A stretch of 64,000 bases of DNA, taken from positions 1 through 64,000 of the IMG/VR virus record IMGVR_UViG_3300042147_000020; one strand, 5' to 3'. Below are positions 1-21,600 of this stretch, piece after piece (the first letter of the stretch is position 1; every line of letters starts with the position of its first letter). Below the pieces are notes generated by a model. That model did no database searches. It was not told the origin of the DNA and was given only the letters and a program-made list of their open reading frames with translations. The position numbers and the translations under genes are program-made.

Positions 1-569
1 TGTACAGCAACGAAGTCTTCCGGCGAACCAGTCAACTTGGCCCAGTGTTCCAGAACACGACGGTACTCGTAAGCGATGGTGGCGTTGGTGACCATTTTCC
101 AGATCAGGTTCGACATCGACGTTTCGAGGTAGTTCGTGAACCAGAAGAAATCCGGGTCGGTGTTGTAGATCACGTACAGCGGCACGTTCATGTTGACACG
201 TGAGCCTTCTGGCAGACCTAGGACTTGGATCGGCAGGTAGCCCAGATCGTGTAGACGTTCCATGCCATCGGTAGGAACTTTACCGACACCCATGTAGTTG
301 TCCATGCGACGCTTGTAACGACGGATCACAGCTTCTTTAGGCTGGGAGAAGAACGACTTGTCCCACAGCTCTTTCAGCTCTTGTAGGATGCCCTGTAGAC
401 CGAACCAAGCAACCTTGTGGTCCCAGAACTTGGACGCCGACACCGACTTCAGGAACAAACGATCAGCACGAGCTGTCAGGTTCCCGTAAGTGTAGTTGGT
501 GTGCAGAGGGAACATCTGACGGTGTGGGATTTTGTAACCGTCAGCAACGTGAGGGGCGAACAGGTTCAT
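1..569 (-). CDS. Nicotinamide phosphoribosyltransferase-family protein (likely Namat of NARP1); runs off the left edge of the window
   Basis: Not in the ORF track; translated by hand from ATG at 569: MNLFAPHVADGYKIPHRQMFP...WFGLQG...LHDLGYLPIQVLGLPEGSRV...FFWFTNYLET...WKMVTNATIAYEYR. These are NAMPT/NadV motifs (DxYKxxH, FGLQ, GYLPI, PEG, WxTNYLET). ATGA overlap with the stop of the upstream Prs-like gene. Confidence 0.9.
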   Translation of the reverse strand, partial: MNLFAPHVADGYKIPHRQMFPLHTNYTYGNLTARADRLFLKSVSASKFWDHKVAWFGLQGILQELKELWDKSFFSQPKEAVIRRYKRRMDNYMGVGKVPTDGMERLHDLGYLPIQVLGLPEGSRVNMNVPLYVIYNTDPDFFWFTNYLETSMSNLIWKMVTNATIAYEYRRVLEHWAKLTGSPEDFVAV

Positions 570-1495
570 GCAAAAATTCCTTGTACGGAGTGCCAGTAGA
601 TTGCTTGATCAGTAACGCCATCAGGACGTTGGCTGTATTGCGCTTCAGGGTGCCACGAGTTGGTGGTCTCGATGCGGCTGTAGTGACGCTTCAGCTCATC
701 GTAACCTTTGGTGAACAGGCCGTGCGTAACCCACAGTTCCAGAGTGTACGCAGGTTTCGCCGTCAGTGGATCACCGAGGCCGAGAATTGGGTCGAGCTTC
801 TCACGCAGAGCCTTCGCCAGTTCCACGAAGGTGTAACCGCCGTCACAGATGTCGTCGACTACCAACCAGTTCATGTCTGCACGCGGTTCGAAGTTGAAGT
901 CCACGCGAGTACCAGTGATCTTGCCGGTAGCAGTGTCACGGTCTTTAAAGCCACAGACCACGTGAGGACAGCCAACCATGCGAGCCAGCTCGAGGGTCTT
1001 CTTCATAGCGCCAGCATCGGGAGCTACGAGTACGGTGTTGGTCCACGCACCAGTGTTCGCTTCGTTACGACGAGTCATGGCCTTCGCCACCACTTGTGGG
1101 AGCGAGATGTGACGAACACGATCCAACAGCGCCAGACCGGTGTCACTGTGAACGTCCAGCACCGACACGGTAGCGTATTGCTGGGAGTTGATCAGGTCAC
1201 AGAACGGCTTGATGGTCAGCGACTCACCGGGACGCGGTACACGGTCTTGACGAGCGTACGGTAAGTACGGCATCCATAGGTGAATCTGGATGGCCGGGTT
1301 CAGACGACGGATGGCGTCAGTGACCATCAACAGGTCCATGATGTCCGTGCCGTTCTTCAGGTGTGCGGTCAGGTTGACAGCAGTCCATGTAGCGACGGTA
1401 GGGTCGACGTATGGGTGCACTTCACCACCCGGCAACACTTTGGAGTCAGCAGGAAACGAGACAGACGTGTTCCCACGGTTGCTAATCAGAATCAT
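566..1495 (-). CDS. Ribose-phosphate pyrophosphokinase-like protein (likely ADPR-PP synthetase Adps of NARP1)
   Basis: Motifs MPYLPYARQDR, LDVHS, VAPDAGA, KxRD, VVDDICDGGxTF, VTHGLF. Start moved to ATG 1495 (RBS AAGGAAG). Confidence 0.9.
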   Translation of the reverse strand: MILISNRGNTSVSFPADSKVLPGGEVHPYVDPTVATWTAVNLTAHLKNGTDIMDLLMVTDAIRRLNPAIQIHLWMPYLPYARQDRVPRPGESLTIKPFCDLINSQQYATVSVLDVHSDTGLALLDRVRHISLPQVVAKAMTRRNEANTGAWTNTVLVAPDAGAMKKTLELARMVGCPHVVCGFKDRDTATGKITGTRVDFNFEPRADMNWLVVDDICDGGYTFVELAKALREKLDPILGLGDPLTAKPAYTLELWVTHGLFTKGYDELKRHYSRIETTNSWHPEAQYSQRPDGVTDQAIYWHSVQGIFA

Positions 1496-1557
1496 TGGAA
1501 CTTCCTTTTCTTTTTTTACAAAACGGGTTACTCTCACATGATCTTGAGTGTATGTAG

Positions 1558-2668: not shown

Positions 2669-2834
2669 GTAAGTACGCCCACCAATTACCAAAGGTTACG
2701 AAAGAGACCATGAAGGGGAGGCAGAGCCATCCCCAAATCGCTGGACCGAAGTGATCTACTGCTCTGATCAAACAGTAGAAGAAGCCAAGTCCACTGAGGA
2801 TCGCCAGCGTTGCGACGATCTGTAGCGCTAGCAT
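2643..2834 (-). CDS. Small membrane protein (2 TM)
   Basis: 63 aa with two hydrophobic segments; fills the gap between flanking genes. Confidence 0.6.
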   Translation of the reverse strand: MLALQIVATLAILSGLGFFYCLIRAVDHFGPAIWGWLCLPFMVSFVTFGNWWAYLHESVRSCS

Positions 2835-3553
2835 TCCACCACCGGTGAGTCACAGGTGTAGCAGTGTTCGCCGAGGTTCATGTTACCTTTCAAATCACCA
2901 GCAGCGCAGGAGGGTTCATCGAAAGGACTGAGCTTAGGGCCCTGATAATCCGCCGGATATACTGGACGCTCTTCACCACCCAGTACATCAGACATGAACT
3001 GAGTGGACTCAGCTACTGTGGACGTACCACGAGGACCGATGTCAGACATGATGTCTCGTTGTGGAGACTGCACCACAGTGATCAGGTCTTGTCGGTAACG
3101 CGTGTCGTAGTCAGGCTCACCCGGCAACACGTTCGCCATGTCAGGGTACATTACCTGAGCAACCTGCAAACCTTTACCAGCGCGTTGTTTCAGCTCAACG
3201 CAGTACTTGGTCACGGCTTCTTCCCCGTGGAGCAAACGAGTGTTACTGCGCATCACCTTGTCGGGTTCAGTCGATTTCACGATGTCAGTCCGCACTTCGT
3301 AAGACGCTACCTTCTCACGCAACCAAGCGTTAGCCTGGTTCTTGAGGATCGCACCCATGACGCTGTTGGGGATGGGTCCACAGATAAACAATTCTGGGAG
3401 TCCCTTGTGTGACAGGCCGACGGTGTACGAGTAGTTCACCGGGTTAGCACCAAACACGGGTGGTGGATTGACCGACAGGATAGCAAAGCCATTCGAGGCG
3501 ATCGAACGTTTGATGTGACGCTTGAGTTGTTTACGGTTGTCAGCAACTTTCAT
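2828..3553 (-). CDS. DUF4262-like protein
   Basis: Motifs YSYTVGLSHKGLPELFICG and QVMYPDxxxVLPGEPDY; GGAG RBS. Confidence 0.7.
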   Translation of the reverse strand: MKVADNRKQLKRHIKRSIASNGFAILSVNPPPVFGANPVNYSYTVGLSHKGLPELFICGPIPNSVMGAILKNQANAWLREKVASYEVRTDIVKSTEPDKVMRSNTRLLHGEEAVTKYCVELKQRAGKGLQVAQVMYPDMANVLPGEPDYDTRYRQDLITVVQSPQRDIMSDIGPRGTSTVAESTQFMSDVLGGEERPVYPADYQGPKLSPFDEPSCAAGDLKGNMNLGEHCYTCDSPVVEC

Positions 3554-7987: not shown

Positions 7988-8782
7988 TCAGATCCTCGGC
8001 ACTACGACACCGGTTTGACCTTGATACTTGCCATCACGATCTTTGTAGGAGGTTTCGCACTCTTCGTCGGACTCGAAGAACAACATCTGTGCAACACCTT
8101 CGTTCGCGTAGATCTTGGCCGGGAGGTTGGTGGTGTTGGAGAACTCCAACGTTACATGACCCTCCCACTCAGGTTCCAGCGGGGTGACGTTCACGATGAT
8201 GCCACAGCGAGCGTAAGTGGACTTACCCAAGCAGATGGTCAACACGTTACGTGGGATACGGAAGTACTCCACGGTACGGGCCAACACGAACGAGTTCGGT
8301 GGAATAATGCAGACCGGACCTTTGAAATCAACGAAGCATTTATCGTCGAAGTTCTTGGGGTCAATGACCGAGGAGTTGATGTTGGTGAAGATCTTGAACT
8401 CGTCAGCACACCGTACGTCGTAACCATACGACGAAGTGCCGTAGGAAATGAGTTTGTCGGCATTCGGGTTCTGAAGTTGGTGCATCGTAGCTTCAGCGTC
8501 ACACATCTCATCCAACATGCTGTTGAACTTGTCAGGAGCCATGCGGCGGACTTGACCGGCTTCGAACGGCTCGATCATTGGTTTGAAGTCACGGACCAAG
8601 GGGTGCTCCGGCTTCAGTCGCCCAGCCCAGAAACGGTTTTCCAGATCTTGCAACTGATCGACGGTGTGGGTGTTACCTTCCCACGCCAGACTGGCGATGT
8701 CGCTCGAACCAGAGCGGGCAGCGATGGAGTGGGTTGGTGGCATGGATTTACGACGAATCCAGCGATCGGGCTTGATGCTCAT
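7988..8782 (-). CDS. dcd: dCTP deaminase with two N-terminal insertions
   Basis: [59 protein letters not shown] closely match proteobacterial Dcd. Confidence 0.95.
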
Positions 8783-9561: not shown

Positions 9562-9843
9562 TTAAACGTTGTGATACTCTGGGCTCAAAGCCACCCAAGC
9601 ACCATTGCTCCGTGCACAGGACAACTGTTGCTGAACCGCCAAACACTGGTAATGAGTACCAGCGAACAGTGTACCAGTCGCAGTATGCGGACGGACATGC
9701 CAGCGCTTCCAGAACCAACGTCCCGTACGTTCAACTACATACTGGAGGTGGTGCTGACTTGCGCGGTACCCAGGACTTTCTAGAACAGATACCCCAGTCT
9801 TCAGCTCACTACCAACGGCGAGATCGCAGTCGAGCTGACTCAC
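9562..9843 (-). CDS. Hypothetical protein
   Basis: 93 aa, GTGA overlap with the TAXI gene stop. Confidence 0.55.
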   Translation of the reverse strand: MSQLDCDLAVGSELKTGVSVLESPGYRASQHHLQYVVERTGRWFWKRWHVRPHTATGTLFAGTHYQCLAVQQQLSCARSNGAWVALSPEYHNV

Positions 9844-10724
9844 TGACGCACAGCCTTCACGTTAGCGGTGATGGCCTTGGTGATCGCACGCTTGACGTCA
9901 CGAGCTTCCTTGGTGTCCATGCTGGCGTGGTAGGCGTTGTTGTACACCACTTGGGCCGCCATGGCGTAGGTGTCAATCGAGAACATTTTGTTGTCGGTAG
10001 GAATGCCGGAGTCACCTTTGCTGGTCAGAGAGAAAGGAGTGTAAAGAGGGTTCTCGTTACGATCCTTGGCCTTACCGAAAGAGGACTCACCGATCTCACC
10101 GATCCACAGGCTGTCTTTGTAGTCGTCAGTGATGTCGCTACTGATCAGACCCGAACGTCCCACGTACAGAATGCCACCGACTTCCACCCGCACGCCGGAC
10201 TTCATGGTGAAGCCCTGCGAAGCTGCTTCTGCCGCTTCCAGCCAGCTATCGAACTCGACAGTTTTGATGTTGGCGTAATCAGGGTCGACTGCCGCGAAGT
10301 TCTTGACAGTTACTTCGGCACCAGAGCCGGAAACATAACCCACCGCACGGATCAGGTTTTCGTCCTTGATCATGTCGGCGAAGGACTTCACGCCAGTAGC
10401 ACCGTGGAGCCAGAAGATGACCTCGGTGTGGGCATTGGTCACGGTGATGTCACGTGGTAGACCCAAGCTGGACACCGCGTCAGCTTGCATGATCGCCATG
10501 ACGCAATCACCCTCTTTGAGCAGGTGGGCGTTCTCGACCGAACCACCGGTGTTCAGGACTTCGAGTTTGGCGCCGATCTTCTTGGCAATGTCCTTGCCGA
10601 TACCTGTACCCAACGACTCGTACGCGCCGGTAGGACCACCGGTGCAGAAGGTCAGGTCAGCAGGTGCCGCCACTGCTACAACGGATGCCAAGGCGAGAGC
10701 CAGGCCAATGAACAGCTTTTTCAT
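9840..10724 (-). CDS. TAXI-family TRAP transporter solute-binding protein (secreted)
   Basis: Signal peptide MKKLFIGLALALASVVAVA; motifs TGGPTGAY, NTGGSVENxxLL, AIMQAD, GSGA. Start moved to 10724 (GGAG RBS). Confidence 0.8.
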   Translation of the reverse strand: MKKLFIGLALALASVVAVAAPADLTFCTGGPTGAYESLGTGIGKDIAKKIGAKLEVLNTGGSVENAHLLKEGDCVMAIMQADAVSSLGLPRDITVTNAHTEVIFWLHGATGVKSFADMIKDENLIRAVGYVSGSGAEVTVKNFAAVDPDYANIKTVEFDSWLEAAEAASQGFTMKSGVRVEVGGILYVGRSGLISSDITDDYKDSLWIGEIGESSFGKAKDRNENPLYTPFSLTSKGDSGIPTDNKMFSIDTYAMAAQVVYNNAYHASMDTKEARDVKRAITKAITANVKAVRQ

Positions 10725-10753
10725 GTGTTTACTCCAACGGGTTTTGGTTTGCG

Positions 10754-11491
10754 TTATTGTGGGGTGGATACTTTCAACTCGCCATGCCACTGTCCGTTGT
10801 AGAACTGTAGCAAGATGAGCATCATGTGATCCAGTAAAAGGGTTGGCACATGTCCAGTCTTCCACTGAATGCCTTCGAACCACTCGAGTTTGAAAGCGTC
10901 TTCGTAGACCCGGAGTAGTACTGAGTTGACTCGAGTGCGGTCTAAATCACCCTCGAGCAACTTTAGGGTGTAGCCGCCACGGAGGGTCAAGTCCAAGGCG
11001 TGATGTTGGTGATCAATCGAGATGACTTTGTAGGGTTCTGACACCACATCGAAAGTCACCAACGTCTGGATGGTAAACTCTGGGGCTTCACGGCAACCAT
11101 TGAAACCAACACTACGTATACCGAAGCACAGGTCATTCTCAGGTTCCGCTAGCAATCTGTGAACACGATCGCCCATGGGTCCGGTAGGCTTGAAACGACC
11201 AACCAACCGATCGTCCTCTACACTCCCTGAAGCAATCACACCACAGACACGCTCCAAGTGCACTTGTGCAGCACGATGAACCACTTCACCGCAAGTCAGG
11301 TGATCGACAGTGGGTGTACCGAACTCCACATAAATCGGAGCACGAGTGAGCATTTCCTCAAACTTGTAGCCCACCTGCTTCGGATCGTACTTACGACCGC
11401 TGGGGGCGACTTTACTGGGGATCGCCAGAGTGACGTGGTAGTAACCGTCAGCATCGGGCTTGAGGTCTTTCACTGGGTTGTGTCCAATCAT
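10754..11491 (-). CDS. Prohead-protease-like (phiKZ gp175 / T4 gp21 type) paralog lacking the canonical catalytic residues
   Basis: GYYxVxL, SGRxY, YVEFGTP (cf. GExGHP), KPTGPMG, ENxxFGIRS (cf. FSxRS), LVTFDVVSEP. Start at 11491 by ATGA overlap. Confidence 0.6.
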   Translation of the reverse strand: MIGHNPVKDLKPDADGYYHVTLAIPSKVAPSGRKYDPKQVGYKFEEMLTRAPIYVEFGTPTVDHLTCGEVVHRAAQVHLERVCGVIASGSVEDDRLVGRFKPTGPMGDRVHRLLAEPENDLCFGIRSVGFNGCREAPEFTIQTLVTFDVVSEPYKVISIDHQHHALDLTLRGGYTLKLLEGDLDRTRVNSVLLRVYEDAFKLEWFEGIQWKTGHVPTLLLDHMMLILLQFYNGQWHGELKVSTPQ

Positions 11492-11655
11492 ACTGGAACT
11501 CCCCGAGCACGACATTCAGCCTTGTATTCCTCGATCATCGTAAAGAGGTTGTTCTTGTGGCGCAGACCTAAACGTACACAACGTTTGATCTTGGCCTCTT
11601 CTTTCTTAATCGCACGTTCCATCTTGGCGAGCACTTCATCTTGATCGTCTGGCAC
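11488..11655 (-). CDS. Small protein (55 aa), not in the ORF track
   Basis: GTG start with AGGA RBS: MPDDQDEVLAKMERAIKKEEAKIKRCVRLGLRHKNNLFTMIEEYKAECRARGVPV; stop overlaps the next ATG. Confidence 0.65.
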   Translation of the reverse strand: MPDDQDEVLAKMERAIKKEEAKIKRCVRLGLRHKNNLFTMIEEYKAECRARGVPV

Positions 11656-11695
11656 GGGAAATTCCTATTAAAGATCAACTACGTGATACCCTTAC

Positions 11696-11772: not shown

Positions 11773-13905
11773 TTATGCTGGAAGACTGAACTCAAATGAA
11801 TCAGTCTGACCAGTACCACTTTTGATACCTGCAAAGTAGAACATGCGAGTACCAAGGATACCAGAACCACCGAAGCCACGTGCTGCACCAGCGTTAGCCG
11901 CCAGAGCTTGCCATGTGTTCGAGAATGGATCGTAAACGTTCGACCCACTATACGGAGCACCGCCGTTAACCGACCCCCACAAGGAGATCACACGACCTTT
12001 GAAGGAGTGGAACGTTCGACGACACCCGTAAGCAGCAGGCATGTTAGCCTTCTCAGTCATTACGCCTGTCACAGTATCGTAGCAGAACGTTTTGTTGATG
12101 TAGACGCTGTTGTTACGACCACCGATCAGATAGATCTTAGTGCCAATAGCGGCGACGCCCAGATCGAGTCGAGGAGTTTGTCCAGTGATAGTCAACTCAG
12201 TCCAAGTGTTGTTGAGAGTATCGTATTTGTACTGGTTAAACTTAGTCGGTACTTCAGGAGAAACAGTACTGCTGGTCATCCCACCGAACATGTAGATGTT
12301 CGTACCCACTACACAACCGTCACCGAAGGTCATCGGTCCAGGGAGCGCTGCTTTAGTAGACCACGTACCTAGAGTAAAGTCGTAACACTCGACCAAGGTA
12401 GTAGCCGCACCGCCGTTAGCGGTTAGGCCGCCGCAGACGTACAACTTACTTCCCACTACGGCTGAAGTGTGTCCAGCTCGAGCAGTAGGTAAGGCAGGCA
12501 GATCGACCCACGCAGTACCGTCGAAGCGACGGAACCAAGCTTGTGGTGTACCACTGAAACCACCAATCCAGTACAACTTCCCATCGTAACTAACGACGTC
12601 GTGGTGGAAGCTATATCCAGGTGACGCTGTGGACTTCCAAGTCATCCCGGAGAAGTTGAACAACTCTTCCAGCACTGGCCGCCACCCGTAAGCTACGTTT
12701 GGCGTATCGTTAGGTTCATACCAGACACCAGCGAACCCAGGGTAACCGCGTAGGAGAGTACCTCCCTGCGTACTACCTTCCTTACAGATGATCATCTCAC
12801 CGGACGAGATACCGCCAAGCCAACCCATGTCAGCAGGAGTGTTATACGCCCACGCAGCGCCAGCGCCGGTGTAAGCATTAGTTACCCTCATGAAGTAGTT
12901 GTTGTACTCACCACCAGGCGAATTGGTTGGATCGTTTCCATCACCACCCGTCATCACCCGCACACGGTACGTCAGGCCACCAATTACAACAGTCTTGGTA
13001 CCCATGATCATACCCAAAGCGTTAAGCTGAGCCCATGACAAAGTCATGCGGATGATCTTCTTCGGCATGTAGAAAGTACTACCGTTGTCAACGAACTTCA
13101 ACCACGGAGTAGTGTCGTTAACCAGAGTACCATCAGTCAAACCAACTGCCGCCGCCAAGGCAGAACCGGTAATGAAGTTAGCAGCAAGTATTTCGCCAAT
13201 GAATGGAATTGGTGGCATGGTGGATTTCTTAACCAGCACTGGACGCCATCCGTACCAATTTTGGGGTGTATCGGGGGAGATGTACCAAATACCTTTAACC
13301 TGTGCTGCGGTTTCCTGTCCACCAGAGTCACTTCCTCGAGTGAAGTGACCGAAGGCAGCACCGTCAGAACAAATAGTCCCCACACCTAGTTCAGCCGAAC
13401 CGTCCATGGTTGCAACGCCCAACATTGGACCAGTGTAGTCGCCCCAGTGTTGGGCGTCTCCTGGGAAGGTTGCACGGTCTGTCATGGTGTAGATGTTGTA
13501 CATGTAGCGGTTCCACTCACCGCCAGCGTTAGACGGACCGGCTGACCCAGCCGGATTTATAGCTCCTGACAACAGCCGGACAACGAAGACTTCACCACCA
13601 ATAGTGACTTCTGCGCCGCCGAGCGACAGACCACGTGCATTGAGCTGTTCCCAACTTACGTTGTAGCGGATTGGCTTCTTGGCGATGTACAGTTCAAGGC
13701 CAGTGTCTTCGATGTAATGTAGCCAGCCCCCGTCTCTGTTCATTAGGGTCCCAGCAGTCAATCCTACCGCTGTGGCTAGGGAATCCCCGTAGATGAAGCT
13801 CACAGAAGAGACTACTCCTTTGAAGGGAGTCCCCGCTGGGAAAGCTAGATCGGAGTTGTCAATAGCCACCGCAACTTGAGTCTTAGACAATAGAGTCTCG
13901 ATCAC
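11773..13905 (-). CDS. Virion protein: two tandem 'WRPVL' domains plus a C-terminal Kelch beta-propeller
   Basis: Two ~200-aa repeats each ending YGWRPVL, then about six Kelch repeats (LYWIGG, LYVCGG, IYMFGG, IYLIGG ... YDxxxxxW). Confidence 0.8.
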   Translation of the reverse strand: MIETLLSKTQVAVAIDNSDLAFPAGTPFKGVVSSVSFIYGDSLATAVGLTAGTLMNRDGGWLHYIEDTGLELYIAKKPIRYNVSWEQLNARGLSLGGAEVTIGGEVFVVRLLSGAINPAGSAGPSNAGGEWNRYMYNIYTMTDRATFPGDAQHWGDYTGPMLGVATMDGSAELGVGTICSDGAAFGHFTRGSDSGGQETAAQVKGIWYISPDTPQNWYGWRPVLVKKSTMPPIPFIGEILAANFITGSALAAAVGLTDGTLVNDTTPWLKFVDNGSTFYMPKKIIRMTLSWAQLNALGMIMGTKTVVIGGLTYRVRVMTGGDGNDPTNSPGGEYNNYFMRVTNAYTGAGAAWAYNTPADMGWLGGISSGEMIICKEGSTQGGTLLRGYPGFAGVWYEPNDTPNVAYGWRPVLEELFNFSGMTWKSTASPGYSFHHDVVSYDGKLYWIGGFSGTPQAWFRRFDGTAWVDLPALPTARAGHTSAVVGSKLYVCGGLTANGGAATTLVECYDFTLGTWSTKAALPGPMTFGDGCVVGTNIYMFGGMTSSTVSPEVPTKFNQYKYDTLNNTWTELTITGQTPRLDLGVAAIGTKIYLIGGRNNSVYINKTFCYDTVTGVMTEKANMPAAYGCRRTFHSFKGRVISLWGSVNGGAPYSGSNVYDPFSNTWQALAANAGAARGFGGSGILGTRMFYFAGIKSGTGQTDSFEFSLPA

Positions 13906-13935
13906 GATTCATTCCCCCTAAGAGGAGTTAAGTTA

Positions 13936-14592
13936 TTACGGGGCTGTGAACAACGTAGCTTCGGCTGGAAGTGTCGGGAGTTCCGCTAGGGTCGTAGCAG
14001 CAGTGACGGCATCTTTGAAGTCCCAGATCTTTTGGTAGCCGACTGACACTGCGTAGAAAGCAGCATCCGTCATAGCAATCAGCTCAGCAGCCGTCAGTAT
14101 CACACAGATGTTCTCGTACACGCGGAACGAGAAATCCATCGCACCACCAGCCACCACAACTTCCTTAGCGATAATACGCAGGGAGGTCAAGTTGGAACGG
14201 TCGGCGTTACGGATCTGGACGTGGTACGTGCCCTCGTTGAAGGCGTAAGCGAAGCCGCGCTCGAATTGGGAAATCCGCAGATCTTCAGCCTCGCGCTGGA
14301 GTTCAGCTTTGCGGGTGGTCAACTGGTCGTTGAGTTCGGCTTGACTGTAAGTGCGTTCGATCCAGCTTTGGTACCACTTACCATCGAGTAATTGTGGCGG
14401 GCCCGCGACAACAACGTCATTCTCCGGGATCGGGGTGTCATAAACGGGTTGGTATCCGAGGGCGATCATTTCCTCTACCTCGGGTGTTGCTGTGAAGCTG
14501 GTAGTGGCTTTGAGTTTGTCGCGGATCTGGTCCAAAGTGATTGGATAGTTACCTGTGGCAACTTCGATGAAGCGAGTGTATAAGATTGACAT
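13936..14592 (-). CDS. Tail-fibre-assembly-like protein (DUF4376-like C-terminus)
   Basis: LGYxPV...GKWYQSW N-terminus; QIRNADRSNL...FRVYEN...KDAVTAATTLAEL C-terminus; lies in the fibre locus. Confidence 0.6.
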   Translation of the reverse strand: MSILYTRFIEVATGNYPITLDQIRDKLKATTSFTATPEVEEMIALGYQPVYDTPIPENDVVVAGPPQLLDGKWYQSWIERTYSQAELNDQLTTRKAELQREAEDLRISQFERGFAYAFNEGTYHVQIRNADRSNLTSLRIIAKEVVVAGGAMDFSFRVYENICVILTAAELIAMTDAAFYAVSVGYQKIWDFKDAVTAATTLAELPTLPAEATLFTAP

Positions 14593-14604
14593 GGTCAGAA
14601 TTCC

Positions 14605-15540
14605 TTACATTACAAGTTCGAGAACGGGACGCCAGTAAGTGTAGACCGCGTTATAGTTACCTATCACGTTAGTGGACACCTTGTCAGGGGCAGTAGTACC
14701 ATCACCGCCTCGCAGAATAATGGTACCACCAGCAGTTGTGGTCACATCTTTGGTATATACGTTCAGGTTGATACCGGCTAGAACCAGGTCGTCTAACGCA
14801 GGCACGCCAAAGTTTTGAATGCGACCTTGGAAATTCGGAGCCATGATGTAATCATACTCACCCCCAATTTGGTTTGCGGGCACAGCCGAAGCAGTCAGGG
14901 TACCTACCCGTGTCCCCGGTAAACGTACCACAAAATTGTCAGTACCTTTAGCCATGACGTAATTTTGAGGGATTGTACCGTAGGTACTTTTCGCCGCAGC
15001 ACTCCAAGTGCTGGGGTCGTCGGTTCCATAGACCAATCCCGCTTTGTACAGTTCGGCCCAAGATAGACCCGAACTATAGGCGAAACACACCCCTTGGTCT
15101 GGAACAAAGAGGATCTTACCGTTATAGACCATTTTGATCCAGCAGGTAATTCCTAGTCCAGCGGCGTTGTTGGTAATGAGCGGGTTGTTGATGTATGCAA
15201 CCAATTCACTGGAAGCGAATAGGTCCTCTGGACTCATGCGACCAAAAGTACCGCAACTCCAGTCACCACGTAGTAATTTCTGAGGCCCAGGGCCCGTGTA
15301 AGGCATGTAGGCCAAAGGCATGTTCGAAGACAACGTTTCTTCAGTACCCACTACTGCACTAACTCGGTAGTGGTAGACTTGGTTACGCACAGCGGTGGTG
15401 TCGGTGTAGGTGAAAATACCCGCAGCAACTTCCGCCAACACCGCAGGTAAAGCATCGTCGAGTATCACACTGTCGGCTCGGTAGACCCGGAACTTGTCAA
15501 CAGTGATGTTTCTGTCGATCCAGTTAAGTGTTAAAGACAT
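14605..15540 (-). CDS. Virion protein: FN3-like N-domain plus 'WRPVLEL' domain
   Basis: LxW...VYR...YTDTT...YHYRV, then TGPGPQxLLRGDWxCGxFG...YWRPVLEL. Confidence 0.8.
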   Translation of the reverse strand: MSLTLNWIDRNITVDKFRVYRADSVILDDALPAVLAEVAAGIFTYTDTTAVRNQVYHYRVSAVVGTEETLSSNMPLAYMPYTGPGPQKLLRGDWSCGTFGRMSPEDLFASSELVAYINNPLITNNAAGLGITCWIKMVYNGKILFVPDQGVCFAYSSGLSWAELYKAGLVYGTDDPSTWSAAAKSTYGTIPQNYVMAKGTDNFVVRLPGTRVGTLTASAVPANQIGGEYDYIMAPNFQGRIQNFGVPALDDLVLAGINLNVYTKDVTTTAGGTIILRGGDGTTAPDKVSTNVIGNYNAVYTYWRPVLELVM

Positions 15541-15550
15541 GGTTAGACCC

Positions 15551-16477
15551 TTATGTCAGAATAAGTTCGAGAACGGGGCGCCAGTTAGCATAACCGCTTG
15601 CATAATCTGCATCAGTGGGAACGTTGTAATCGAACCCTGTACTGTTGCTCACAGATATTGCGAGCTTACCCGAGGAAAAATGCTGGGTTGCAGAACCAAC
15701 GCCTCCTGGTGGAACCTCGTCGTTCCATTTATCTTGGGGTGATGTAGAATATAAGGTTAGTCCTTGTCGCCCCATCAAGCTCCCCCATTCGGATGCGTCT
15801 GTGGCGATAACACCTGGTGCATACACGTTGGTTGCCGCATCAGTGACCGACGGTGCCCGCACCAAAAAGTTATACGTGGCGTAAGGAACGACCACTTTTT
15901 GGTTAGTCAAAGTGATACCAGCAATGGTTGTTAGTACGAAGGGGGCTGAACCAGTGTCGTCCGTTCCGTATATTAATCCATTGTTATAAATGTCCCTCCA
16001 GCGGCAGGTCCCTGCGGCAAACACATTGTTAGGAATAAAAAGAACCTTACCCTTACGGATAAACTTATACCACCCAGTCACGGTGCCGTCGGCTGGAGTG
16101 GAGTTTCCGAGATTTGGGTTATTAAGGAGAGCCCTTAACTGAGAGATGCTGAGGAAGTTGGCTGTGGGAACCAACCCAAAATATCCGCAGTCCCAATTTC
16201 CTCGTAAGAGCGTCTGGGGACCTGGACCTGTGTCAGGGTAATGTCCCATGATCAGTACTGGACTTAGTAGTTCCTGTCCTGCCCGGACGTGACCCACCGC
16301 GTAGTAGTACGTAGTGTTGCGTACGGCAGTTGCGTCACTGTAAGACGTGGCTGATCCAGCAGCGGTTGCCAAAGCGGCAGGAAGGTTATTTACGTCGAGT
16401 GGTGTAGTAGACCGATAGATGTTAATGCTTTCTGCGAGCGCCGCGTTAGCAGCACCCCATGTCAAGGTAACAGACAT
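15551..16477 (-). CDS. Virion protein: FN3-like N-domain plus 'WRPVLEL' domain
   Basis: Paralog of 14605-15540 (TGPGPQTLLRGNWDCGYFG...NWRPVLEL). Confidence 0.8.
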   Translation of the reverse strand: MSVTLTWGAANAALAESINIYRSTTPLDVNNLPAALATAAGSATSYSDATAVRNTTYYYAVGHVRAGQELLSPVLIMGHYPDTGPGPQTLLRGNWDCGYFGLVPTANFLSISQLRALLNNPNLGNSTPADGTVTGWYKFIRKGKVLFIPNNVFAAGTCRWRDIYNNGLIYGTDDTGSAPFVLTTIAGITLTNQKVVVPYATYNFLVRAPSVTDAATNVYAPGVIATDASEWGSLMGRQGLTLYSTSPQDKWNDEVPPGGVGSATQHFSSGKLAISVSNSTGFDYNVPTDADYASGYANWRPVLELILT

Positions 16478-16487
16478 AACTCACTCC

Positions 16488-17450
16488 TTATACCGCAGCC
16501 GGTTCGATGAGTTCCAACACGGGCCACCAGCATGAGATAGATTGGGTTATGGTGATAGCCCCGATGTTTCTTCGAGTAAGGCCGTCGCGGGTACCAGTGA
16601 CGTTAGAACCACGAACCAACGACTGGGTTGCCGCACCCGAAGTAACCTTCTCTTGTGTCAGAATACCGTACGCCATAGACGCCGCGCTATATCCCATGGT
16701 CGTCAAGGTATTGTTTGCTTGGTTAGCCATGCGTTGGACGGTAGGTACCCATACTGAGATAGGGTACATGAGATCATCGTACTCACAAGTAAAGGTTTCA
16801 ACCGGCTCTGCTACGTTACCGGTTGGTGGAAAGACGCCGTAGTCATCGTTATAACCGCGCATTAAGCGAACGCGGTAGGTATCGGCGCCAATAGTTACCT
16901 GTGCGTTCTGGTTAACGTTGGCACCGGCGTTGTACGGACCATTGTCGTTGGAGCCGAATACCAGCCCAGCGTTGTACAGTGCCGTCCAACCAACCCCGGA
17001 AACAGGTAGTTGTTCGGGCACGTAGATCACTTTGCCGTTACGAGCGAACTTGTGCCATTTGGGAGACACGTTCTGCACCGTACCTGAAAGGAAGTTCACC
17101 GCTGTACGCAGTGCGTTGATGTTAATGAAGGACGCCGATGCGATACTACCGAAGTATCCGTAGTTGTAGTCACCGGCTTTCAAGGTGTTAGGACCAGCAC
17201 CACGACGAGGAACAGTTACGATCTGATAGTTTGGTGATACCGTCCGGTCTGTCGCCGAAATGGTCTCGAATACGTAGTAGTACGTGGTACCACGCAACAC
17301 CGTGGAGTCAGTGTAAGTAGTTTCACCTGCCGTTAGAGAAACCAACAAACCAGTCAGGTTAGCTCGGTCAATTGCCGAAGTACCACGGTAGATGTTTACC
17401 GTGATGGGAGTGGCCCCATTGGGGTTTGTCCAAGTCAATTTGTTATACAT
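16488..17450 (-). CDS. Virion protein: FN3-like N-domain plus 'WWPVLEL' domain
   Basis: Paralog (GAGPNTLKAGDYNYGYFG...WHKFARNGK...WWPVLEL). Confidence 0.8.
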   Translation of the reverse strand: MYNKLTWTNPNGATPITVNIYRGTSAIDRANLTGLLVSLTAGETTYTDSTVLRGTTYYYVFETISATDRTVSPNYQIVTVPRRGAGPNTLKAGDYNYGYFGSIASASFININALRTAVNFLSGTVQNVSPKWHKFARNGKVIYVPEQLPVSGVGWTALYNAGLVFGSNDNGPYNAGANVNQNAQVTIGADTYRVRLMRGYNDDYGVFPPTGNVAEPVETFTCEYDDLMYPISVWVPTVQRMANQANNTLTTMGYSAASMAYGILTQEKVTSGAATQSLVRGSNVTGTRDGLTRRNIGAITITQSISCWWPVLELIEPAAV

Positions 17451-17459
17451 GAAAATTCC

Positions 17460-18503
17460 TTACGCGACGTTCGCGCCACTAACAGTGAAAGGGTTCAAGT
17501 CTGCTAAGCTGTACACCAAGTTAGCTGGGTCACTTGCCAATTGAGTACCGATCGCGCTAATTGTAAAAGCGTTTAAGTCAGGTGCTGCACTTGATGTGAC
17601 GTTAACTGGGTTTAGCGCGCAACCTGGGAAGGTAGCTCCAGTGACCACAGGTTGTTTGGTGGGCCACAGAGTAATCACGTTGACTGGGTTAAACAAGGCT
17701 TCGTTAAACCCAGAACCTAGTTGGGCTTGGCGTGAGTCTAGAATCGAGGGTGCTTGAAGCCCCGTCGAAGTTCCGATGACTGTGTACGGATCTAGTAGCG
17801 TTTCATCTGGGATCAATTCCAGTACTGGATACCAATTTGAGTTCGGTGAAGCCTTACTGTAACTCCATTTTGGGGTAAGACCCGTTGCATCGCCCCTAGC
17901 CCAAAATAATGCTATATTAGACGAGCTGGTCTCCTGCACCGACATGTTTAAATTGCTACCCACGTAGCTCAGTGCGTTACTAACCCATTTATCGGATGGT
18001 GTGTTAGCACCCACTAGGACTCGCCCAAACAACTGGTCGAATTCATTGTTAGCCGCTACCACCGAGGCTGGATCAGAACCCATACCAGTCGGCAACCGTG
18101 GGAGTAGATACCAGTTACGAGTGCCGTCGAATTTCTGAATAGGGTTCCACTGATCGACCCCAGCACCTACTGGGTACAACCCATTACCCTTAACGCCGTA
18201 CACTAACCCAGAGTTATATAGGTCGTTCCACACAATGGCACTGAGGGCCATTTGTCTGGAAATGTAAATCACTTTGTTATTGCGGAAGAATTTAAACCAC
18301 TGGGCCCCTGTCCAAGAGTTGAGGGTGCCCGTAGGAATATTGAACTTTAAAACCAAGTCTTTTCCGTAGAACAGTTCAGTTCCAGACACCTCTCCGAAGT
18401 AACCCAGCGTGCTGTTACCGAACTGTAAAGTTTTGGTTCCAGGGCCTGAGTTGGGGTAAAGGTTCGAACCACTTGGAGATTTACCTAACATCATTTCTAA
18501 CAT
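17460..18503 (-). CDS. Virion protein: 'WYPVLEL' domain plus C-terminal NPVNV repeats
   Basis: Start moved to MLEMML at 18503 (GGAGG RBS); SGPGTKTLQFG...GYFGEV...WYPVLEL. Confidence 0.8.
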   Translation of the reverse strand: MLEMMLGKSPSGSNLYPNSGPGTKTLQFGNSTLGYFGEVSGTELFYGKDLVLKFNIPTGTLNSWTGAQWFKFFRNNKVIYISRQMALSAIVWNDLYNSGLVYGVKGNGLYPVGAGVDQWNPIQKFDGTRNWYLLPRLPTGMGSDPASVVAANNEFDQLFGRVLVGANTPSDKWVSNALSYVGSNLNMSVQETSSSNIALFWARGDATGLTPKWSYSKASPNSNWYPVLELIPDETLLDPYTVIGTSTGLQAPSILDSRQAQLGSGFNEALFNPVNVITLWPTKQPVVTGATFPGCALNPVNVTSSAAPDLNAFTISAIGTQLASDPANLVYSLADLNPFTVSGANVA

Positions 18504-18553
18504 TTTGTCACCTCCGATGGGGGGACACGTGCTACCAAAAGATAGACTGAGAC

Positions 18554-18594
18554 ACCACCACACAAGGGGTCAGTAACTCCCCTTGTGTGGTGGT
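18554..18594. repeat. Perfect 16-bp inverted repeat (hairpin without a U-tract in the operon direction)
   Basis: ACCACCACACAAGGGG-TCAGTAACT-CCCCTTGTGTGGTGGT. Confidence 0.8.
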
Positions 18595-18600: not shown

Positions 18601-21600
18601 TTAAACAGAAGCACCGACGGTACCAATCCACTTCGTACCATCCCACAACAAAGTGACAATGGTGGTGGAAGCACCGAGTACAGGAGCAGCACCACCGTTC
18701 CACGTGATGGTTGGCCACGTGATCGTTGCAGCACCTTGGATGACCAACACCACGGACATGGTACGAGTTGCACCCGGCACCGTACCGGCTTTGAACGAGA
18801 TGGTAGTCGCAGTGGAGTTAGCCACCGACCACACGTTACCGATGGCCAAGTCGAGGACACCAGCCGCAGCAGCGTTCATCTTCAGGTCGTAGACGTCCAA
18901 GGACACCCAAGCACCGTTCTTACGCAGGTACTGTTTACCGTCAGAGGCAGCGTCCGCGAGGGAAGCCGGAACGATCACCCACGCTGCACCTTTACGCATG
19001 TAGCCGTTGGCATCGTTCGGAGCATCTTGCAGAACAGAGACCCACGCTGCACCTTTACGACCGTAAGCCAAGGCGTCGTTAGGTGCTTCAGGGAGACCGG
19101 CAGGAACAGTAACTTCCGCCCATGCTCCATTCTTACGAGCGTATTGTTTACCGTCGTTAGGAGCTTCTGCTACTGCGAAGACCACCTCAGTCCAAGCACC
19201 GTTCTTACGAACGTATTGCTTGCCATCACTCAGAGCTTCAGCCACAGGGACTGCTACCCAAGCGCCGTTCTTCCGGGTGTAGAAACCACCATCAGACGGA
19301 GCTTCGGAGATACCAGCCGCAGGGATCACGACTTCAAGCCAAGAACCGTTCTTACGGATGTACTGCTTACCGTCGAGCGGTGCTTCGATGACAGGGATCT
19401 CGAACCAGACACCATCTTCACGACCATACAGCTTGCCGTCTTGTGGTGCTTCCAGTACGTCGACCTTAACCCACGCACCGTCTTTACGAGCGTAGTACTG
19501 ACCATCCGACAGGGCTTCCAGTACAGTGATCTCAACCCACTGATCGTATTGACGAGCGTAGACCTTACCATCGTCAGACGGACTGTAGACGTTACCACCA
19601 CCCATGTAACCGAGTGACACCCACAGAACGTCCGTAGACTTTCTGAAGTACTGCATGGTACCGGTGTTCAGGTAGTAGTCGGCACGACGACCGTCCAGTG
19701 GACCCGGATCACGACCCAGGGAAATCCAAGCAGTGCCTGGTTCACCTTTGTCGCCAGTGAAACCGATCGGACCTTTCGGACCAACGACCGTATCACCCTT
19801 ATCACCTTTGTCGCCCTTAGGACCTTGGATAGACCCCAAGTCATCATAGGCTGCACCAGTCCAACCCCAGAAGTTCAGCCCGATCATGTAACCCTGACCG
19901 AGAGTACCAGTACCCGGCAGGTCAGCAGTGCTAGCGAGTTTCCCGAGGATTGTGATACCCGGACCCATTGGACCGTCTTCACCTTGTGGTCCTACGATGT
20001 TGCCGAGGAATACCCAAGCGGTACCATCGTAGGAGTAAACGTCGCCATCACCGACGATGTAGCCGTCGCCTTGAACCATTCCAGTAACGGCGTTCAGAGC
20101 AGCGAGATCGACGAGGTTACCCTTCGGTTTGAAGTTGTTACCTTGATCACCTTTAGGACCTTCCGGACCAATCAAGCGAGCCAAGAAGTCGTTGATGCTG
20201 GTGATAGACGGATCGACGATCTGTGCCATCTCCAGAGCAGACTTACCAGTAGGACCAGTCAGGTCGCCGAGGTTAATCCAACCTGCACCGTTGTACACCC
20301 ATAAGTGACCAGTGACCATGTAGGTCCAGCCGATCTGCGGGTCAGCAACACCGTTGAGTAGGGACGGGTTAGACAGGATGCCTTTAGCGACCATGGAGTT
20401 ACCAGTGTCACCTTTGTCGCCTTTCACCCCGTCTTCACCTTGAGGACCTTGAATGACACCGAGGTCAAGCCACTCGTCACCATCCCAACCCCAGAAGTGA
20501 CCTTGGATCAGGTAGCCATCACCCAACTCACCCGTAGCAGGCAAACCGGCAGTGGTATCGAACTTACCTTTCAGTGTCAGACCGGCACCGAGGTCGCCCT
20601 TATCACCTTTGTCACCTTTGATGCTGTCACCTTGGTCGCCCTTAGGGCCAACGTAAGTACCACAGTCAACCCACGCACCACTGATGGTGACGTAGAGGTT
20701 CTGACCAGCGATCCAAGCAGCGAAAGCAGGAGCAACGGTAGGGTCTGGCAAGTTCTCGAAGGCGGCTACTTTACCAGCGATAACCAAGTTCTGACCCGGA
20801 TCACCTTTAGGACCGGTAACCGAATCACCTTTGTCCCCTTTAGGACCGGCCACAGCAATCAACCAATCTTCGACTGTCCCGGTGTAACCCGCTTCTACAG
20901 CCAGTGCGTAGTTCGACTTACCTTTGATACTCTCCAGCCATTCAGCCAGAGTACCCACATAGCCGTCTTCTTCAACGGCCAGTTGGTAAGCAGAGAGACC
21001 TTGAACAACACCGAGGTCTTCCCATTCAGTACCCGACCACACCCACAAGTGACCTTGGATGTAGTAACCGTCACCACCGGCGTTACCGGAAGGAGGGAGG
21101 TCGCCCGGATCTTCAAACTTACCCAACACCGAGATGGCGTTGGCAGGATCGCCTTTAACACCTTGAGGACCGATGTCGCCCTCGTCACCCTTAGGACCAA
21201 CCAAGCTTTCCAAGTACTGGAGCAACGTACCACTGAAACCGGTAGAGATCGCCAGTTCGTAGTTGTTCTTACCCACCAAGGAAGCCAACCATTGGGCTTC
21301 AGTGCCACTATAACCACGGGAAGCAGCCAGCTCGTAAGCCGACTTACCAGTAGGGCCGACTTGACCAACCTTGGCCCAGCCCACTGTATCCCAAACATAC
21401 ATGGACTCGTCGATGATCCAAGAGTCGCCGGAGACGTTATCCCCGTTAGGCAACTCGGAGATGTCTGACAGAGAACCCATGATCCGTAGACCGATACCAT
21501 CATGACCTTTGAGGGACTCGATCCACTCCTCGAACGTACCTGGGAACCCGCCTTCGATTACCGCAACGTCATACGCTGAGTAACCCTGAATACCGCGGAC

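What the first reader, a model, noticed from the sequence alone, without database searches (positions are those of the whole stretch)
10754..11491. Apparent catalytically dead prohead-protease paralog in an accessory operon
Seen: motifs in order GYYHVTL, SGRKY, YVEFGTP, KPTGPMG, ENDLCFGIRS, LVTFDVVSEP, plus an extra ~90-aa C-terminal region. Established (from recall): T4 gp21 / phiKZ gp175-type head proteases use a His in GExxHP and a Ser in (F/V)SxR. Here the His position is Thr and the first Ser is Gly. Inference: a pseudo-protease located away from the head genes. It could act as a decoy for defence systems that sense phage proteases, or as a regulator of head maturation.
Basis: partly seen in the sequence, partly recalled or inferred. 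Interest (0 to 1): 0.65.

Follow-up and report, generated by a model that had tools for sequence, protein, structure and literature searches.

The report
Dead prohead-protease paralog, swappable cassette
A giant rhizosphere phage carries a second copy of its capsid-maturation protease that has lost its catalytic residues; such dead copies are common in giant phages and were first noted in 2017, but this one sits in a slot whose content is swapped between closely related phages, which points to a role facing the host rather than in capsid maturation.

Summary
Window 10754..11491 (minus strand) encodes a 245-aa protein carrying all six quoted motifs. It matches Pfam Peptidase_S80 above cut-off, and its first ~155 residues fold like the T4 gp21 prohead protease. 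The canonical protease lies 113 kb away in the same 239-kb genome. Against 22 canonical S80 proteases, the catalytic His is Thr, the nucleophile Ser is Gly and the Asp is kept. No alternative Ser/Cys/His is conserved, so it is a pseudoprotease.

It is not a new kind. Ali et al. 2017 described such paralogs (SPN3US gp117, 201phi2-1 gp206). Here 13 of 21 surveyed jumbo-phage records carry an extra copy, and 43 of 45 dead representatives fall on one side of a single branch.

New points:
- dN/dS is about 0.2, so the protein is maintained.
- It lacks the canonical autocleaved tail that is inferred to target the protease to the prohead.
- The ~90-aa C-terminal region is one of two interchangeable modules.
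- The gene is a cassette: an independent metagenome contig keeps both flanks at ~94% identity but replaces exactly this gene.

Function is untested. The best guess is a non-catalytic, host-facing binding protein.

The parts
10754..11491 (-). Pseudoprotease gene (245 aa plus TAA stop): S80-fold core followed by C-terminal module X
   Evidence: The IMG gene call P0003 is the same 245-aa product.
11033..11491 (-). Protease-like core (residues 1-153 of the 245-aa protein), gp21/S80 fold, catalytically degenerate
   Evidence: Pfam S80 match in the genome search at C1:11033-11491. AlphaFold2 pLDDT is about 90 over residues 8-160. The top Foldseek hit is T4 gp21, 5JBL, E 1e-4, probability 1.00.
11315..11317 (-). 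Codon ACA = Thr at the position of the catalytic His (T59 in the 245-aa protein, T67 in the 253-aa ORF)
   Evidence: Aligned to H75 of the own canonical protease and to His in 22/22 canonical S80 proteases. Codon read.
11120..11122 (-). Codon GGT = Gly at the position of the nucleophile Ser (G124 / G132)
   Evidence: Aligned to S152 of the canonical protease and to Ser in 22/22 canonical proteases. It is Gly in 6/6 close relatives and in 84% of the dead clade.
11048..11050 (-). Codon GAT = retained Asp (D148 / D156), invariant in both dead and canonical proteins
10757..11032 (-). C-terminal module X (~90 aa), beta-rich, fold unknown. It is shared only with the closest relatives and with a core-less X+Y protein.
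   Evidence: Alignment. dN/dS is 0.17. AlphaFold2 pLDDT is below 50. No family or atlas match.
10721..10753 (-). In-frame remnant after the TAA stop (reads RKPKPVGVNT*). It matches the conserved end of module Y and of the orthologs' tails. It contains the GGAG ribosome-binding site and the ATGA overlap with the next gene.
   Evidence: Sequence read, compared with the tails.
11488..11655 (-). Upstream 55-aa ORF, translationally coupled (ATGA) to the pseudoprotease. It is conserved at 82-89% in three related phages.
   Evidence: No family match.
9840..10724 (-). Downstream gene: 294-aa NMT1_3/TAXI-like protein with an N-terminal signal-peptide-like segment (phrog_6856). It is the conserved right-hand border of the variable slot.
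   Evidence: It is 95/80/91% identical in relatives while the slot content changes.

Best explanation
The gene encodes a pseudoprotease: a paralog of the phage's own S80 (phiKZ gp175-type) prohead protease. It keeps the gp21-like fold and scaffold residues (E-x-G-x-P, F-x-x-R, T-x-D). It has lost the catalytic His and Ser, and also two further residues that are nearly invariant in real proteases. It belongs to an old lineage of dead S80 paralogs that is common in phiKZ-like jumbo phages, and it is not a recent duplicate of the neighbouring genome's protease.

Shown here: it cannot act as a Ser/His protease; it is kept by purifying selection; it lacks the canonical autocleaved C-terminal tail, which is inferred from SPN3US work to direct the real protease into proheads; and its gene is a hot-swapped cassette between conserved neighbours.

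Inferred: it works as a non-catalytic binding protein in the cytoplasm, in a host-facing accessory role, most likely counter-defence or host takeover. The old substrate cleft and/or the exchangeable end modules (X, Y, Lar zinc ribbon) would hold a variable partner. It is probably not a component or regulator of head maturation.
For: Identity:
- Pfam S80 47.2 bits.
- Fold match to T4 gp21 5JBL, probability 1.00.
- The own canonical protease scores 255 bits at C1:123804-124568.

Dead as a protease:
- His is T/R and Ser is G in 6/6 relatives, against H and S in 22/22 canonical proteases.
- The dead clade also lost the canonical H102 and N148.
- The only invariant residues in 35 dead-clade cores are P, G, R and D. 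No Ser, Cys or His is conserved.

Old lineage:
- 45 of 156 representatives are dead, and 43 of them lie on one side of a branch with the catalytic columns removed. The label needs 3 changes against 39.4 when shuffled.
- 13 of 21 jumbo-phage records have an extra copy.

Functional: dN/dS is 0.19 for the core and 0.17 for module X.

Not head-directed:
- It lacks the xLES autocleavage block and the terminal Trp.
- 201phi2-1 gp206 and gp210 carry no virion mass-spectrometry note, unlike their neighbours.

Cassette behaviour:
- The X3 contig keeps the flanks at 94.4% and 94.7% nucleotide identity but replaces 10747-11487 with 845 other letters. X2 contigs break at the same borders.
- Neighbours are 80-95% identical in relatives, while the core is 74%, 40% or absent.
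- Architectures found in the slot: core+X; a second core copy in tandem with core+X; Lar+core; core+Y; X+Y.
- The former His column is the 7th most variable of 138 columns.

Neighbourhood: a NARP1-like NAD-reconstitution gene pair lies 9 kb away on the same strand.
Against: - No partner, binding activity, expression time or phenotype is known for any member of this class.
- The retained scaffold residues may be purely structural, for example an Arg-Asp pair, rather than a peptide-binding groove.
- High divergence and cassette exchange also fit a weakly constrained gene beside recombination-prone tail-fibre genes.
- One relative (L037) has lost the protease-like core entirely and keeps only X+Y, so the core may be dispensable.
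- dS is near saturation (1.0-1.8), so the dN/dS value is rough.
- Absence of a mass-spectrometry note in an annotation is weak evidence for absence from virions.
Confidence: 0.5

Rival explanations
1. Shield against protease-sensing immunity, a specific form of the reader's defence idea. The dead paralog binds Glu-containing bait loops, such as the CD-NTase activation loop of CBASS, or competes with the active protease for them. It does not cleave them, so the host does not sense the prohead protease before capsids are finished.
For: CBASS CD-NTases are activated when phage prohead proteases cut a surface loop, and T4 gp21, of the same fold superfamily, is sufficient to do so (PMC12991175; Richmond-Buccola 2024, cited). 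The dead clade keeps the cleft-flanking motifs but not the catalytic residues. The gene shows cassette-like diversification and hypervariability at the former His site. A NARP1-like counter-defence pair lies nearby.
Against: There is no direct evidence. It is unknown whether this phage's host has such CBASS operons. A stoichiometric shield would have to outnumber or out-bind many bait molecules. Jumbo phages of this group may already hide much of their biology from cytoplasmic sensors. The core is deleted in one relative.
Confidence: 0.13
2. Regulator of the real head protease. The dead paralog pairs with the canonical S80 protease or with its propeptide in the cytoplasm and holds it inactive until prohead assembly, or it tunes which S/A/G-x-E sites are cut.
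For: Dead paralogs regulating active ones are a common theme; cFLIP/caspase-8 and the trypanosome AdoMetDC prozyme appeared in the literature search. The two proteins share a fold. Both classes keep the DxDGYY motif.
Against: The complex prediction of core plus canonical protease domain gave no verdict, which is not evidence either way. The canonical protease is well conserved among relatives, while the paralog is swapped, duplicated or deleted, which is not expected of an obligate partner. About 8 of 21 genomes lack any paralog. The paralog has no canonical C-terminal targeting tail.
Confidence: 0.12
3. Structural or assembly factor of the virion. It would be tied to the adjacent tail-fibre module, for example as a fibre adaptor or chaperone, or packaged in the head, with module X as an attachment domain.
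For: The gene lies directly downstream of a run of tail-fibre and virion-protein paralogs on the same strand, with no terminator-like site between them. The same position next to tail spikes or fibres is seen in L004 and L037. It co-varies in divergence with the fibre genes. The protease fold is reported to be related to tail-tube folds (Fokine and Rossmann 2016; recalled, not checked here).
Against: In Xoo-sp14, SPN3US and 201phi2-1 the dead copies are not next to fibre genes. 201phi2-1 gp206 and gp210 lack the virion mass-spectrometry note that their neighbours carry.
Confidence: 0.1
4. A decaying duplicate with no function of its own, carried along in a recombination-prone region.
For: The catalytic residues are lost, the tail is cut short by an early TAA, the core is deleted in L037, and copy number varies.
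Against: dN/dS is about 0.2 in both domains. Reading frames are intact in all relatives. The clade is old and widespread, with fixed scaffold residues. The gene is translationally coupled within an operon.
Confidence: 0.1

Closest known systems
SPN3US gp117 and its homologs (Erwinia phages Stratton gp135 and Kwan gp144; 201phi2-1 gp206 and gp210; PhiPA3 gp143): 'diverged homolog to the prohead protease', Ali et al. 2017, PMC5694885
   Same: A second, strongly diverged S80-like gene in a jumbo phage that also has a canonical protease. The aligned catalytic His is absent, the Asp is kept, and the canonical C-terminal region is missing. Some phages have two copies. Function is unknown. Homology was detected here: BLASTP E 6e-5, hhalign probability 91%, and the dead-clade profile hits gp117 at E 1.8e-8.
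   Different: The window's protein is closer to canonical S80. It passes the Pfam cut-off, whereas gp117 scores 15 bits. It clearly has Gly at the Ser position, whereas the paper aligned a Ser for gp117. It carries an extra ~90-aa module X. There is no shared synteny with gp117-gp119. The cassette behaviour had not been described.
Canonical S80 prohead proteases (phiKZ gp175, SPN3US gp245, this genome's P0002)
   Same: The same Pfam family and fold, and shared motifs: DxDGYY, E-x-G-x-P, KPxGP, F-x-x-R and T-(W/F)-D.
   Different: No His and no Ser, and loss of the canonical H102 and N148. Two insertions are missing. There is no xLES autocleavage block and no terminal Trp. The gene lies 113 kb from the head-gene position.
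T4 gp21 (MEROPS S77; PDB 5JBL)
   Same: Best structural match: Foldseek E 1e-4, probability 1.00, TM 0.6 normalised on the target.
   Different: gp21 uses H85 and S140; the dead mutant H85A/S140A is used in PMC12991175. Sequence identity is only 11-16%.
Pseudoproteases in general (iRhoms, cFLIP and others)
   Same: A protease fold retained without its catalytic residues and maintained by selection.
   Different: Unrelated folds and cellular contexts. The resemblance is in concept only (and general knowledge).

Membership tests
Peptidase S80 (Pfam PF20034; phiKZ gp175-type prohead protease) | Sequence match to the family model above the curated cut-off | tested here: met
   47.2 bits against a cut-off of 23.4, E 2e-12, residues 9-161. 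46.7 bits in the genome search.
Peptidase S80 (Pfam PF20034; phiKZ gp175-type prohead protease) | gp21/assemblin-type protease fold | tested here: met
   AlphaFold2 pLDDT about 90 for residues 8-160. Top PDB hit is T4 gp21 5JBL with probability 1.00, and herpesvirus proteases appear lower in the list.
Peptidase S80 (Pfam PF20034; phiKZ gp175-type prohead protease) | Catalytic His (E-x-x-H-P) | tested here: not met
   Thr here, and T/R/Q/N/A/Y/K in close relatives. His in 22/22 and 111/111 canonical sequences.
Peptidase S80 (Pfam PF20034; phiKZ gp175-type prohead protease) | Nucleophile Ser (F-S-x-R) | tested here: not met
   Gly here and in 84% of the dead clade. Ser is invariant in canonical sequences. 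The next Ser (IRS) is not conserved in either class.
Peptidase S80 (Pfam PF20034; phiKZ gp175-type prohead protease) | Third triad residue Asp (T-W/F-D) | tested here: met
   Invariant in all 28 aligned sequences and in 35 dead-clade cores.
Peptidase S80 (Pfam PF20034; phiKZ gp175-type prohead protease) | C-terminal propeptide with autocleavage site, removed on activation and inferred to target the prohead | tested here: not met
   The xLES block and the terminal Trp of the canonical sequences are absent, and an unrelated module X takes their place. The role of this region is taken from PMC5694885.
Peptidase S80 (Pfam PF20034; phiKZ gp175-type prohead protease) | Cleaves head proteins after S/A/G-x-E | not testable with these tools
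   Needs a biochemical assay. The loss of both His and Ser predicts no activity.
gp117-type dead paralogs of the jumbo-phage prohead protease (Ali et al. 2017) | Extra S80-like gene in a genome that also has a canonical protease | tested here: met
   Two S80 matches in the 238,799-bp genome, at 255 and 46.7 bits.
gp117-type dead paralogs of the jumbo-phage prohead protease (Ali et al. 2017) | Catalytic His not aligned or lost, Asp kept, canonical C-terminal region absent | tested here: met
.
gp117-type dead paralogs of the jumbo-phage prohead protease (Ali et al. 2017) | Common descent with gp117 (one dead lineage) | tested here: inconclusive
   43 of 45 dead representatives lie on one side of a branch, and the dead-clade profile finds gp117 at E 1.8e-8. 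gp117 itself was not in the tree, long branches may attract each other, and the AU test did not finish.
Phage counter-defence proteins against protease-sensing CBASS | Blocks CD-NTase activation by a phage prohead protease | not testable with these tools
   No such protein family has been described. The idea rests on PMC12991175 plus context.

The most novel reading that the evidence does not exclude
The dead S80 paralogs of jumbo phages are a widespread, fast-diversifying family of counter-defence proteins. They use the old substrate cleft to hold, without cutting, the bait loops of host immune sensors that detect prohead-protease activity (CBASS CD-NTase activation loops or similar). Exchangeable end modules (X, Y, Lar zinc ribbon) would adapt them to different hosts.
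Probability: 0.12. Interest if true: 0.85.

Novelty: new member of a known kind. Interest (0 to 1): 0.45.

Why it matters
Dead copies of the capsid-maturation protease have been known in giant phages since 2017, but nobody knows what they do. This locus adds three usable facts. The dead copies form an old lineage present in most surveyed jumbo phages. They are kept by selection. This one behaves like a swappable cassette between conserved genes in near-identical phages, as host-range and counter-defence genes do. In 2024-2026 bacterial CBASS immunity was shown to be switched on by prohead-protease activity, which gives a concrete experiment: does the dead copy blunt that trigger? There is also a practical point. 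Automatic annotation already labels such genes 'head maturation protease' (201phi2-1 gp206 and gp210), which is misleading.

Tried and rejected
- **Complex prediction.** The paralog core with the canonical protease domain scored 0.00, which is no verdict. It is not used as evidence either way.
- **Fold of module X.** AlphaFold2 gave pLDDT below 50 for residues 161-253, with only 3 sequences covering that part. The second fold job was not spent because only one more X-bearing sequence (P0013) was found.
- **Protein atlas search on residues 162-253.** Scores were about 0.8, which is noise level.
- **Pfam and PHROG scans.** Nothing for the C-terminal part, for modules X and Y, or for the 55-aa ORF.
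- **Megablast against phage records.** The 5-kb locus found no match.
- **SPN3US gp118 and gp119 as counterparts of module X or the NMT1_3 gene.** No similarity, so there is no shared synteny with gp117.
- **AU test of a single dead clade.** Not finished after 576 s.
- **A first tree run.** It mislabelled every row because of a column-mapping error of mine. It was redone.
- **Sigma-70 promoter and terminator scan of 7800-14000.** Fewer hits than in shuffled sequence, and nothing at the operon borders. These phages use their own RNA polymerases, so the scan says little.
- **Expression.** No RNA run holds the locus, so expression is untested.
- **An alternative nucleophile (the Ser of IRS, Thr 67, nearby His residues).** Rejected, because none of them is conserved in the family.
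- **NMT1_3 or the 55-aa protein as co-evolving partners.** Unlikely, because both stay 80-95% identical while the slot content is exchanged.
- **Length limits of the word search.** It sees only proteins of 0.55-1.75 times the query length. The C-terminal modules were therefore covered by the exhaustive profile search and by a word search with the X+Y protein P0013, not by a word search on module X alone.

Full report
**What is there.** The window is the first 64 kb of a 238,799-bp IMG/VR virus record. On the minus strand, 10754..11515 is an open frame of 253 aa. The real start is the ATG at 11491. It overlaps the stop of an upstream 55-aa ORF as ATGA, GGGGAG lies 7 nt upstream, and the IMG gene call and all relatives begin MIGHNP. 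All six quoted motifs are present in order, followed by about 90 more residues.

**Family and fold.** Pfam Peptidase_S80 matches residues 9-161 at 47.2 bits against a cut-off of 23.4, E 2e-12. Two PHROG 'head maturation protease' families match at E 3e-15 and 1.5e-14. The genome holds two S80 matches. A canonical one lies at C1:123804-124568, scoring 255 bits, with a 254-aa product (P0002). The other is this gene at 46.7 bits. The two are 25% identical, E 5e-12. An AlphaFold2 model built on a 28-sequence alignment is confident for residues 8-160 (pLDDT about 90) and poor for 161-253. Its best PDB match is the T4 capsid assembly protease gp21 (5JBL; E 1e-4, probability 1.00, TM 0.6 on the target), with herpesvirus proteases further down. 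By its canonical protease the phage belongs to the phiKZ-like jumbo phages. The nearest named relatives are Xanthomonas phages RTH11, Xoo-sp14 and LucasX at about 48% identity. The DNA is found in rhizosphere metagenomes.

**Is it dead?** The catalytic residues are taken from the literature. For SPN3US gp245 they are H77, S153 and D178 (PMC5694885). For T4 gp21 they are H85 and S140, since H85A/S140A is the dead mutant used in PMC12991175. I aligned six members of the paralog family with 22 canonical S80 proteases, including SPN3US gp245 and P0002.

| Position | 22 canonical proteases | 6 paralog-family members |
|---|---|---|
| Catalytic His | His in 22/22 | Thr in 5, Arg in 1 |
| Nucleophile Ser | Ser in 22/22 | Gly in 6/6 |
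| Asp | Asp in 22/22 | Asp in 6/6 |

In the 245-aa protein these positions are T59, G124 and D148 (T67, G132 and D156 in the 253-aa ORF), and their codons were checked. It is S, G or A in genuine proteases, so it is not a nucleophile. Across 35 dead-clade cores the only invariant residues are a Pro, a Gly, an Arg and the Asp. No Ser, Cys or His is conserved. The dead class has also lost two further positions that are nearly invariant in real proteases, H102 and N148 of P0002. The catalytic machinery as a whole has decayed while the scaffold motifs remain.

**Prior art and spread.** Ali et al. [quoted passage not shown] It has no aligned catalytic His, keeps the Asp and lacks the protease's 3' region. 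They listed homologs in Erwinia phages, some with two copies, and in 201phi2-1 (gp206) and PhiPA3 (gp143). The window's family is homologous to gp117: BLASTP E 6e-5, hhalign probability 91%, and the dead-clade profile hits gp117 at E 1.8e-8. There is no shared synteny.

An exhaustive profile search of 1.84 billion representatives gave 689 hits. I classified the sequences in hand at the catalytic columns: the 150 best hits plus those collected earlier. About 110 are H/S/D. About 45 are 'dead', with Gly or Ala at the Ser position, almost any residue at the His position, and the Asp kept. Most dead ones are 130-190 aa, that is, core only. In a maximum-likelihood tree built without the two catalytic columns, the canonical/dead label needs 3 changes, against 39.4 when shuffled (0 of 500 shuffles as low). 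Of the 45 dead rows, 43 lie on one side of a branch. The window's protein is far from its own canonical protease in this tree. Long-branch attraction cannot be excluded, and the AU test did not finish. Of 21 jumbo-phage records searched, 13 carry at least one extra S80-like copy. phiKZ itself shows only the canonical one at E 0.01 or below.

**The gene is maintained.** Against its ortholog in a 238-kb relative (L006, 70% identity), dN/dS is 0.19 for the core and 0.17 for the C-terminal part. dS is 1.0-1.8, near saturation, so the values are rough.

**The C-terminal extension is modular.** The window's residues from about 160 to 245 (module X) are shared only with the two closest relatives and with P0013. 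Other family members carry an unrelated module Y instead (P0006, P0008, P0011, P0157-P0161). Y also exists as a stand-alone 91-aa protein, P0096. P0013 is X+Y with no protease core. One member has an N-terminal Lar-type zinc ribbon (P0007). The closest orthologs end with the last residues of module Y. In the window the same residues lie in frame just after the TAA stop (10721-10753) and contain the ribosome-binding site and ATGA overlap of the next gene. This suggests an ancestral core+X+Y followed by deletions, which is an inference. None of the modules matches a known family.

**The locus is a variable slot.** In three related phage contigs the gene order is the same: tail fibres or spikes, the 55-aa ORF, the slot, the NMT1_3-like gene, small ORFs, then dCTP deaminase. 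The slot content differs.

| Phage or contig | Content of the slot |
|---|---|
| Window | core+X |
| G001 (L006/L035) | a second dead core (His to Gln, Ser to Arg) in tandem with core+X |
| L004 | a 119-aa ORF, then Lar+core |
| L037 | X+Y without a core |

Neighbouring genes are far better conserved than the slot content.

| Gene | L006 | L004 | L037 |
|---|---|---|---|
| NMT1_3-like | 95% | 80% | 91% |
| 55-aa ORF | 82% | 84% | 89% |
| dCTP deaminase | 81% | 83% | 80% |
| Pseudoprotease core | 74% | 40% | absent |

That divergence is similar to the tail-fibre genes, at 45-75%. Public contigs laid on 9500-13000 give the sharpest picture. In an independent rhizosphere run (X3), one 3,886-nt contig matches 9561-10746 at 94.4% and 11488-12419 at 94.7%, but replaces 10747-11487, exactly the gene, with 845 other letters. 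That contig length equals the longest contig of P0008, a core+Y protein. In run X2 the contigs break at 10745 and 11522, and the loose end at 10745 encodes the end of module Y. Run X1 is identical to the window and may be its source, so it is not independent. Within the dead clade the former His column is the 7th most variable of 138 columns (3.6 bits), although it sits between invariant Gly and Pro.

**Head involvement.** Canonical S80 proteases share a C-terminal xLES block, which is the autocleavage region in SPN3US gp245 and is inferred there to direct the enzyme into proheads (PMC5694885). They also share a terminal Trp. The paralogs have neither. RefSeq nevertheless labels them 'head maturation protease'. 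This is weak evidence that the class is not a virion component.

**Mechanism.**
- Shown: the protein has the fold of a prohead protease, cannot use the Ser/His mechanism, is under purifying selection, lacks the canonical C-terminal tail, and occupies a slot that is exchanged between closely related phages.
- Inferred: it acts by binding, in a role that faces a variable partner, most likely a host factor. I put this at about 0.5.
Type I CBASS is triggered by prohead proteases (Richmond-Buccola 2024, cited), and CD-NTases are activated when the protease cuts a surface loop. T4 gp21 is sufficient, and the H85A/S140A mutant is inert (PMC12991175). Because activity is what is sensed, a dead paralog cannot be a decoy that is itself sensed. 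It could be a non-cutting binder of the bait loop or a competitor. I rate this specific version at about 0.12-0.13.
- The regulator-of-maturation idea gets about 0.12. The complex job gave no verdict, and an obligate partner would not be expected to be swapped, duplicated or deleted.
- A virion or fibre-assembly role and a functionless remnant get about 0.1 each.

**Verdict.** The observation and the 'pseudoprotease' reading are confirmed. The class is already known and common, so this is a new member of a known kind. Its function remains open. The cassette behaviour and the modular ends are the new and useful facts, and they make a defence-related experiment worth doing.

Noticed in passing
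window 9840..10724 (-): A phage-encoded 294-aa NMT1_3/TAXI-like (periplasmic solute-binding type) protein with a signal-peptide-like N-terminus (MKKLFIGLALALASVVAVA). It belongs to phrog_6856 of unknown function. It is 80-95% identical in three related phages and translationally coupled to the slot gene in relatives. What a jumbo phage does with a secreted binding protein is unexplained.
   Followed up: partly
window 3..569 (-) and 566..1537 (-): A PRPP-synthetase-like gene sits next to a NAPRTase-family gene that is cut by the contig end. The latter is 85% identical to the L004 gene that carries PF04095. The pair looks like the NARP1 NAD+-reconstitution counter-defence pathway (Adps plus Namat; bioRxiv 10.1101/2024.02.11.579819), but ordinary NAD salvage is not excluded.
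   Followed up: partly
window 11773..18563 (-): A run of five paralogous virion or fibre genes (phrog_1062/3589), interrupted by a 218-aa DUF4376 gene. The last paralog (11773..13905, 710 aa) ends in a Kelch beta-propeller. Upstream lies a 1087-aa tail-fibre gene (18601..21864). These genes are 45-75% identical in relatives, that is, they are host-range-type variable genes.
   Followed up: partly
window 10721..10753 (-): After the TAA stop of the pseudoprotease the frame continues as RKPKPVGVNT*, matching the conserved tail of the orthologs and the end of module Y. In relatives the stop overlaps the next gene's ATG (ATGA). Here an earlier stop cuts off 10 residues.
   Followed up: yes
L035 1465..1956 (-) in G001 (IMGVR_UViG_3300044852_000015): The closest relative has a second dead S80 copy in tandem (164 aa; His to Gln, Ser to Arg). 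It resembles the Lar-fused P0007 type more than its neighbour. Both copies begin with SSSMIG(H/D)N, so gain or loss by recombination between the copies is likely.
   Followed up: partly
L037 6001..6564 (+) (JGI 3300044878 contig, 18 kb): In this relative the slot holds a 187-aa protein made of modules X+Y with no protease-like core. It starts MIGH and then jumps to module X, which looks like an in-frame deletion of the core.
   Followed up: partly
L004 10001..10807 (+) (JGI 3300046542 contig, 92 kb): The slot gene is fused to an N-terminal Lar-type zinc ribbon (PF14354, restriction alleviation family). An alginate-lyase-domain gene and Peptidase_S74 tail spikes lie upstream.
   Followed up: no
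L050 (NC_010821.1, 201phi2-1) gp206 138213..138650 and gp210 140090..140467: RefSeq labels both dead-class paralogs 'head maturation protease', although the real protease lies at about 192.6 kb. This is probably an annotation artefact of family-based naming.
   Followed up: partly
L049 (MT939492.1, Xoo-sp14) gene 75, 55487..55942: The dead S80 copy of Xanthomonas phage Xoo-sp14 lies two genes after a dCTP deaminase, so a loose association with dCTP deaminase recurs outside the window's clade. An SspB-like 'ClpXP specificity-enhancing factor' gene is nearby.
   Followed up: no
P0056 (251 aa): An S80 protein with a high family score (131 bits) keeps the His but has Gly at the Ser position and a 76-aa N-terminal extension. 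It groups with canonical proteases in the tree, so it may be a separate, recent inactivation.
   Followed up: no
window 7988..8782 (-) and 2828..3553 (-): A dCTP deaminase (PF22769) and a DUF4262 protein lie in the same leftward transcription block. The order is conserved in L004 and L037.
   Followed up: no
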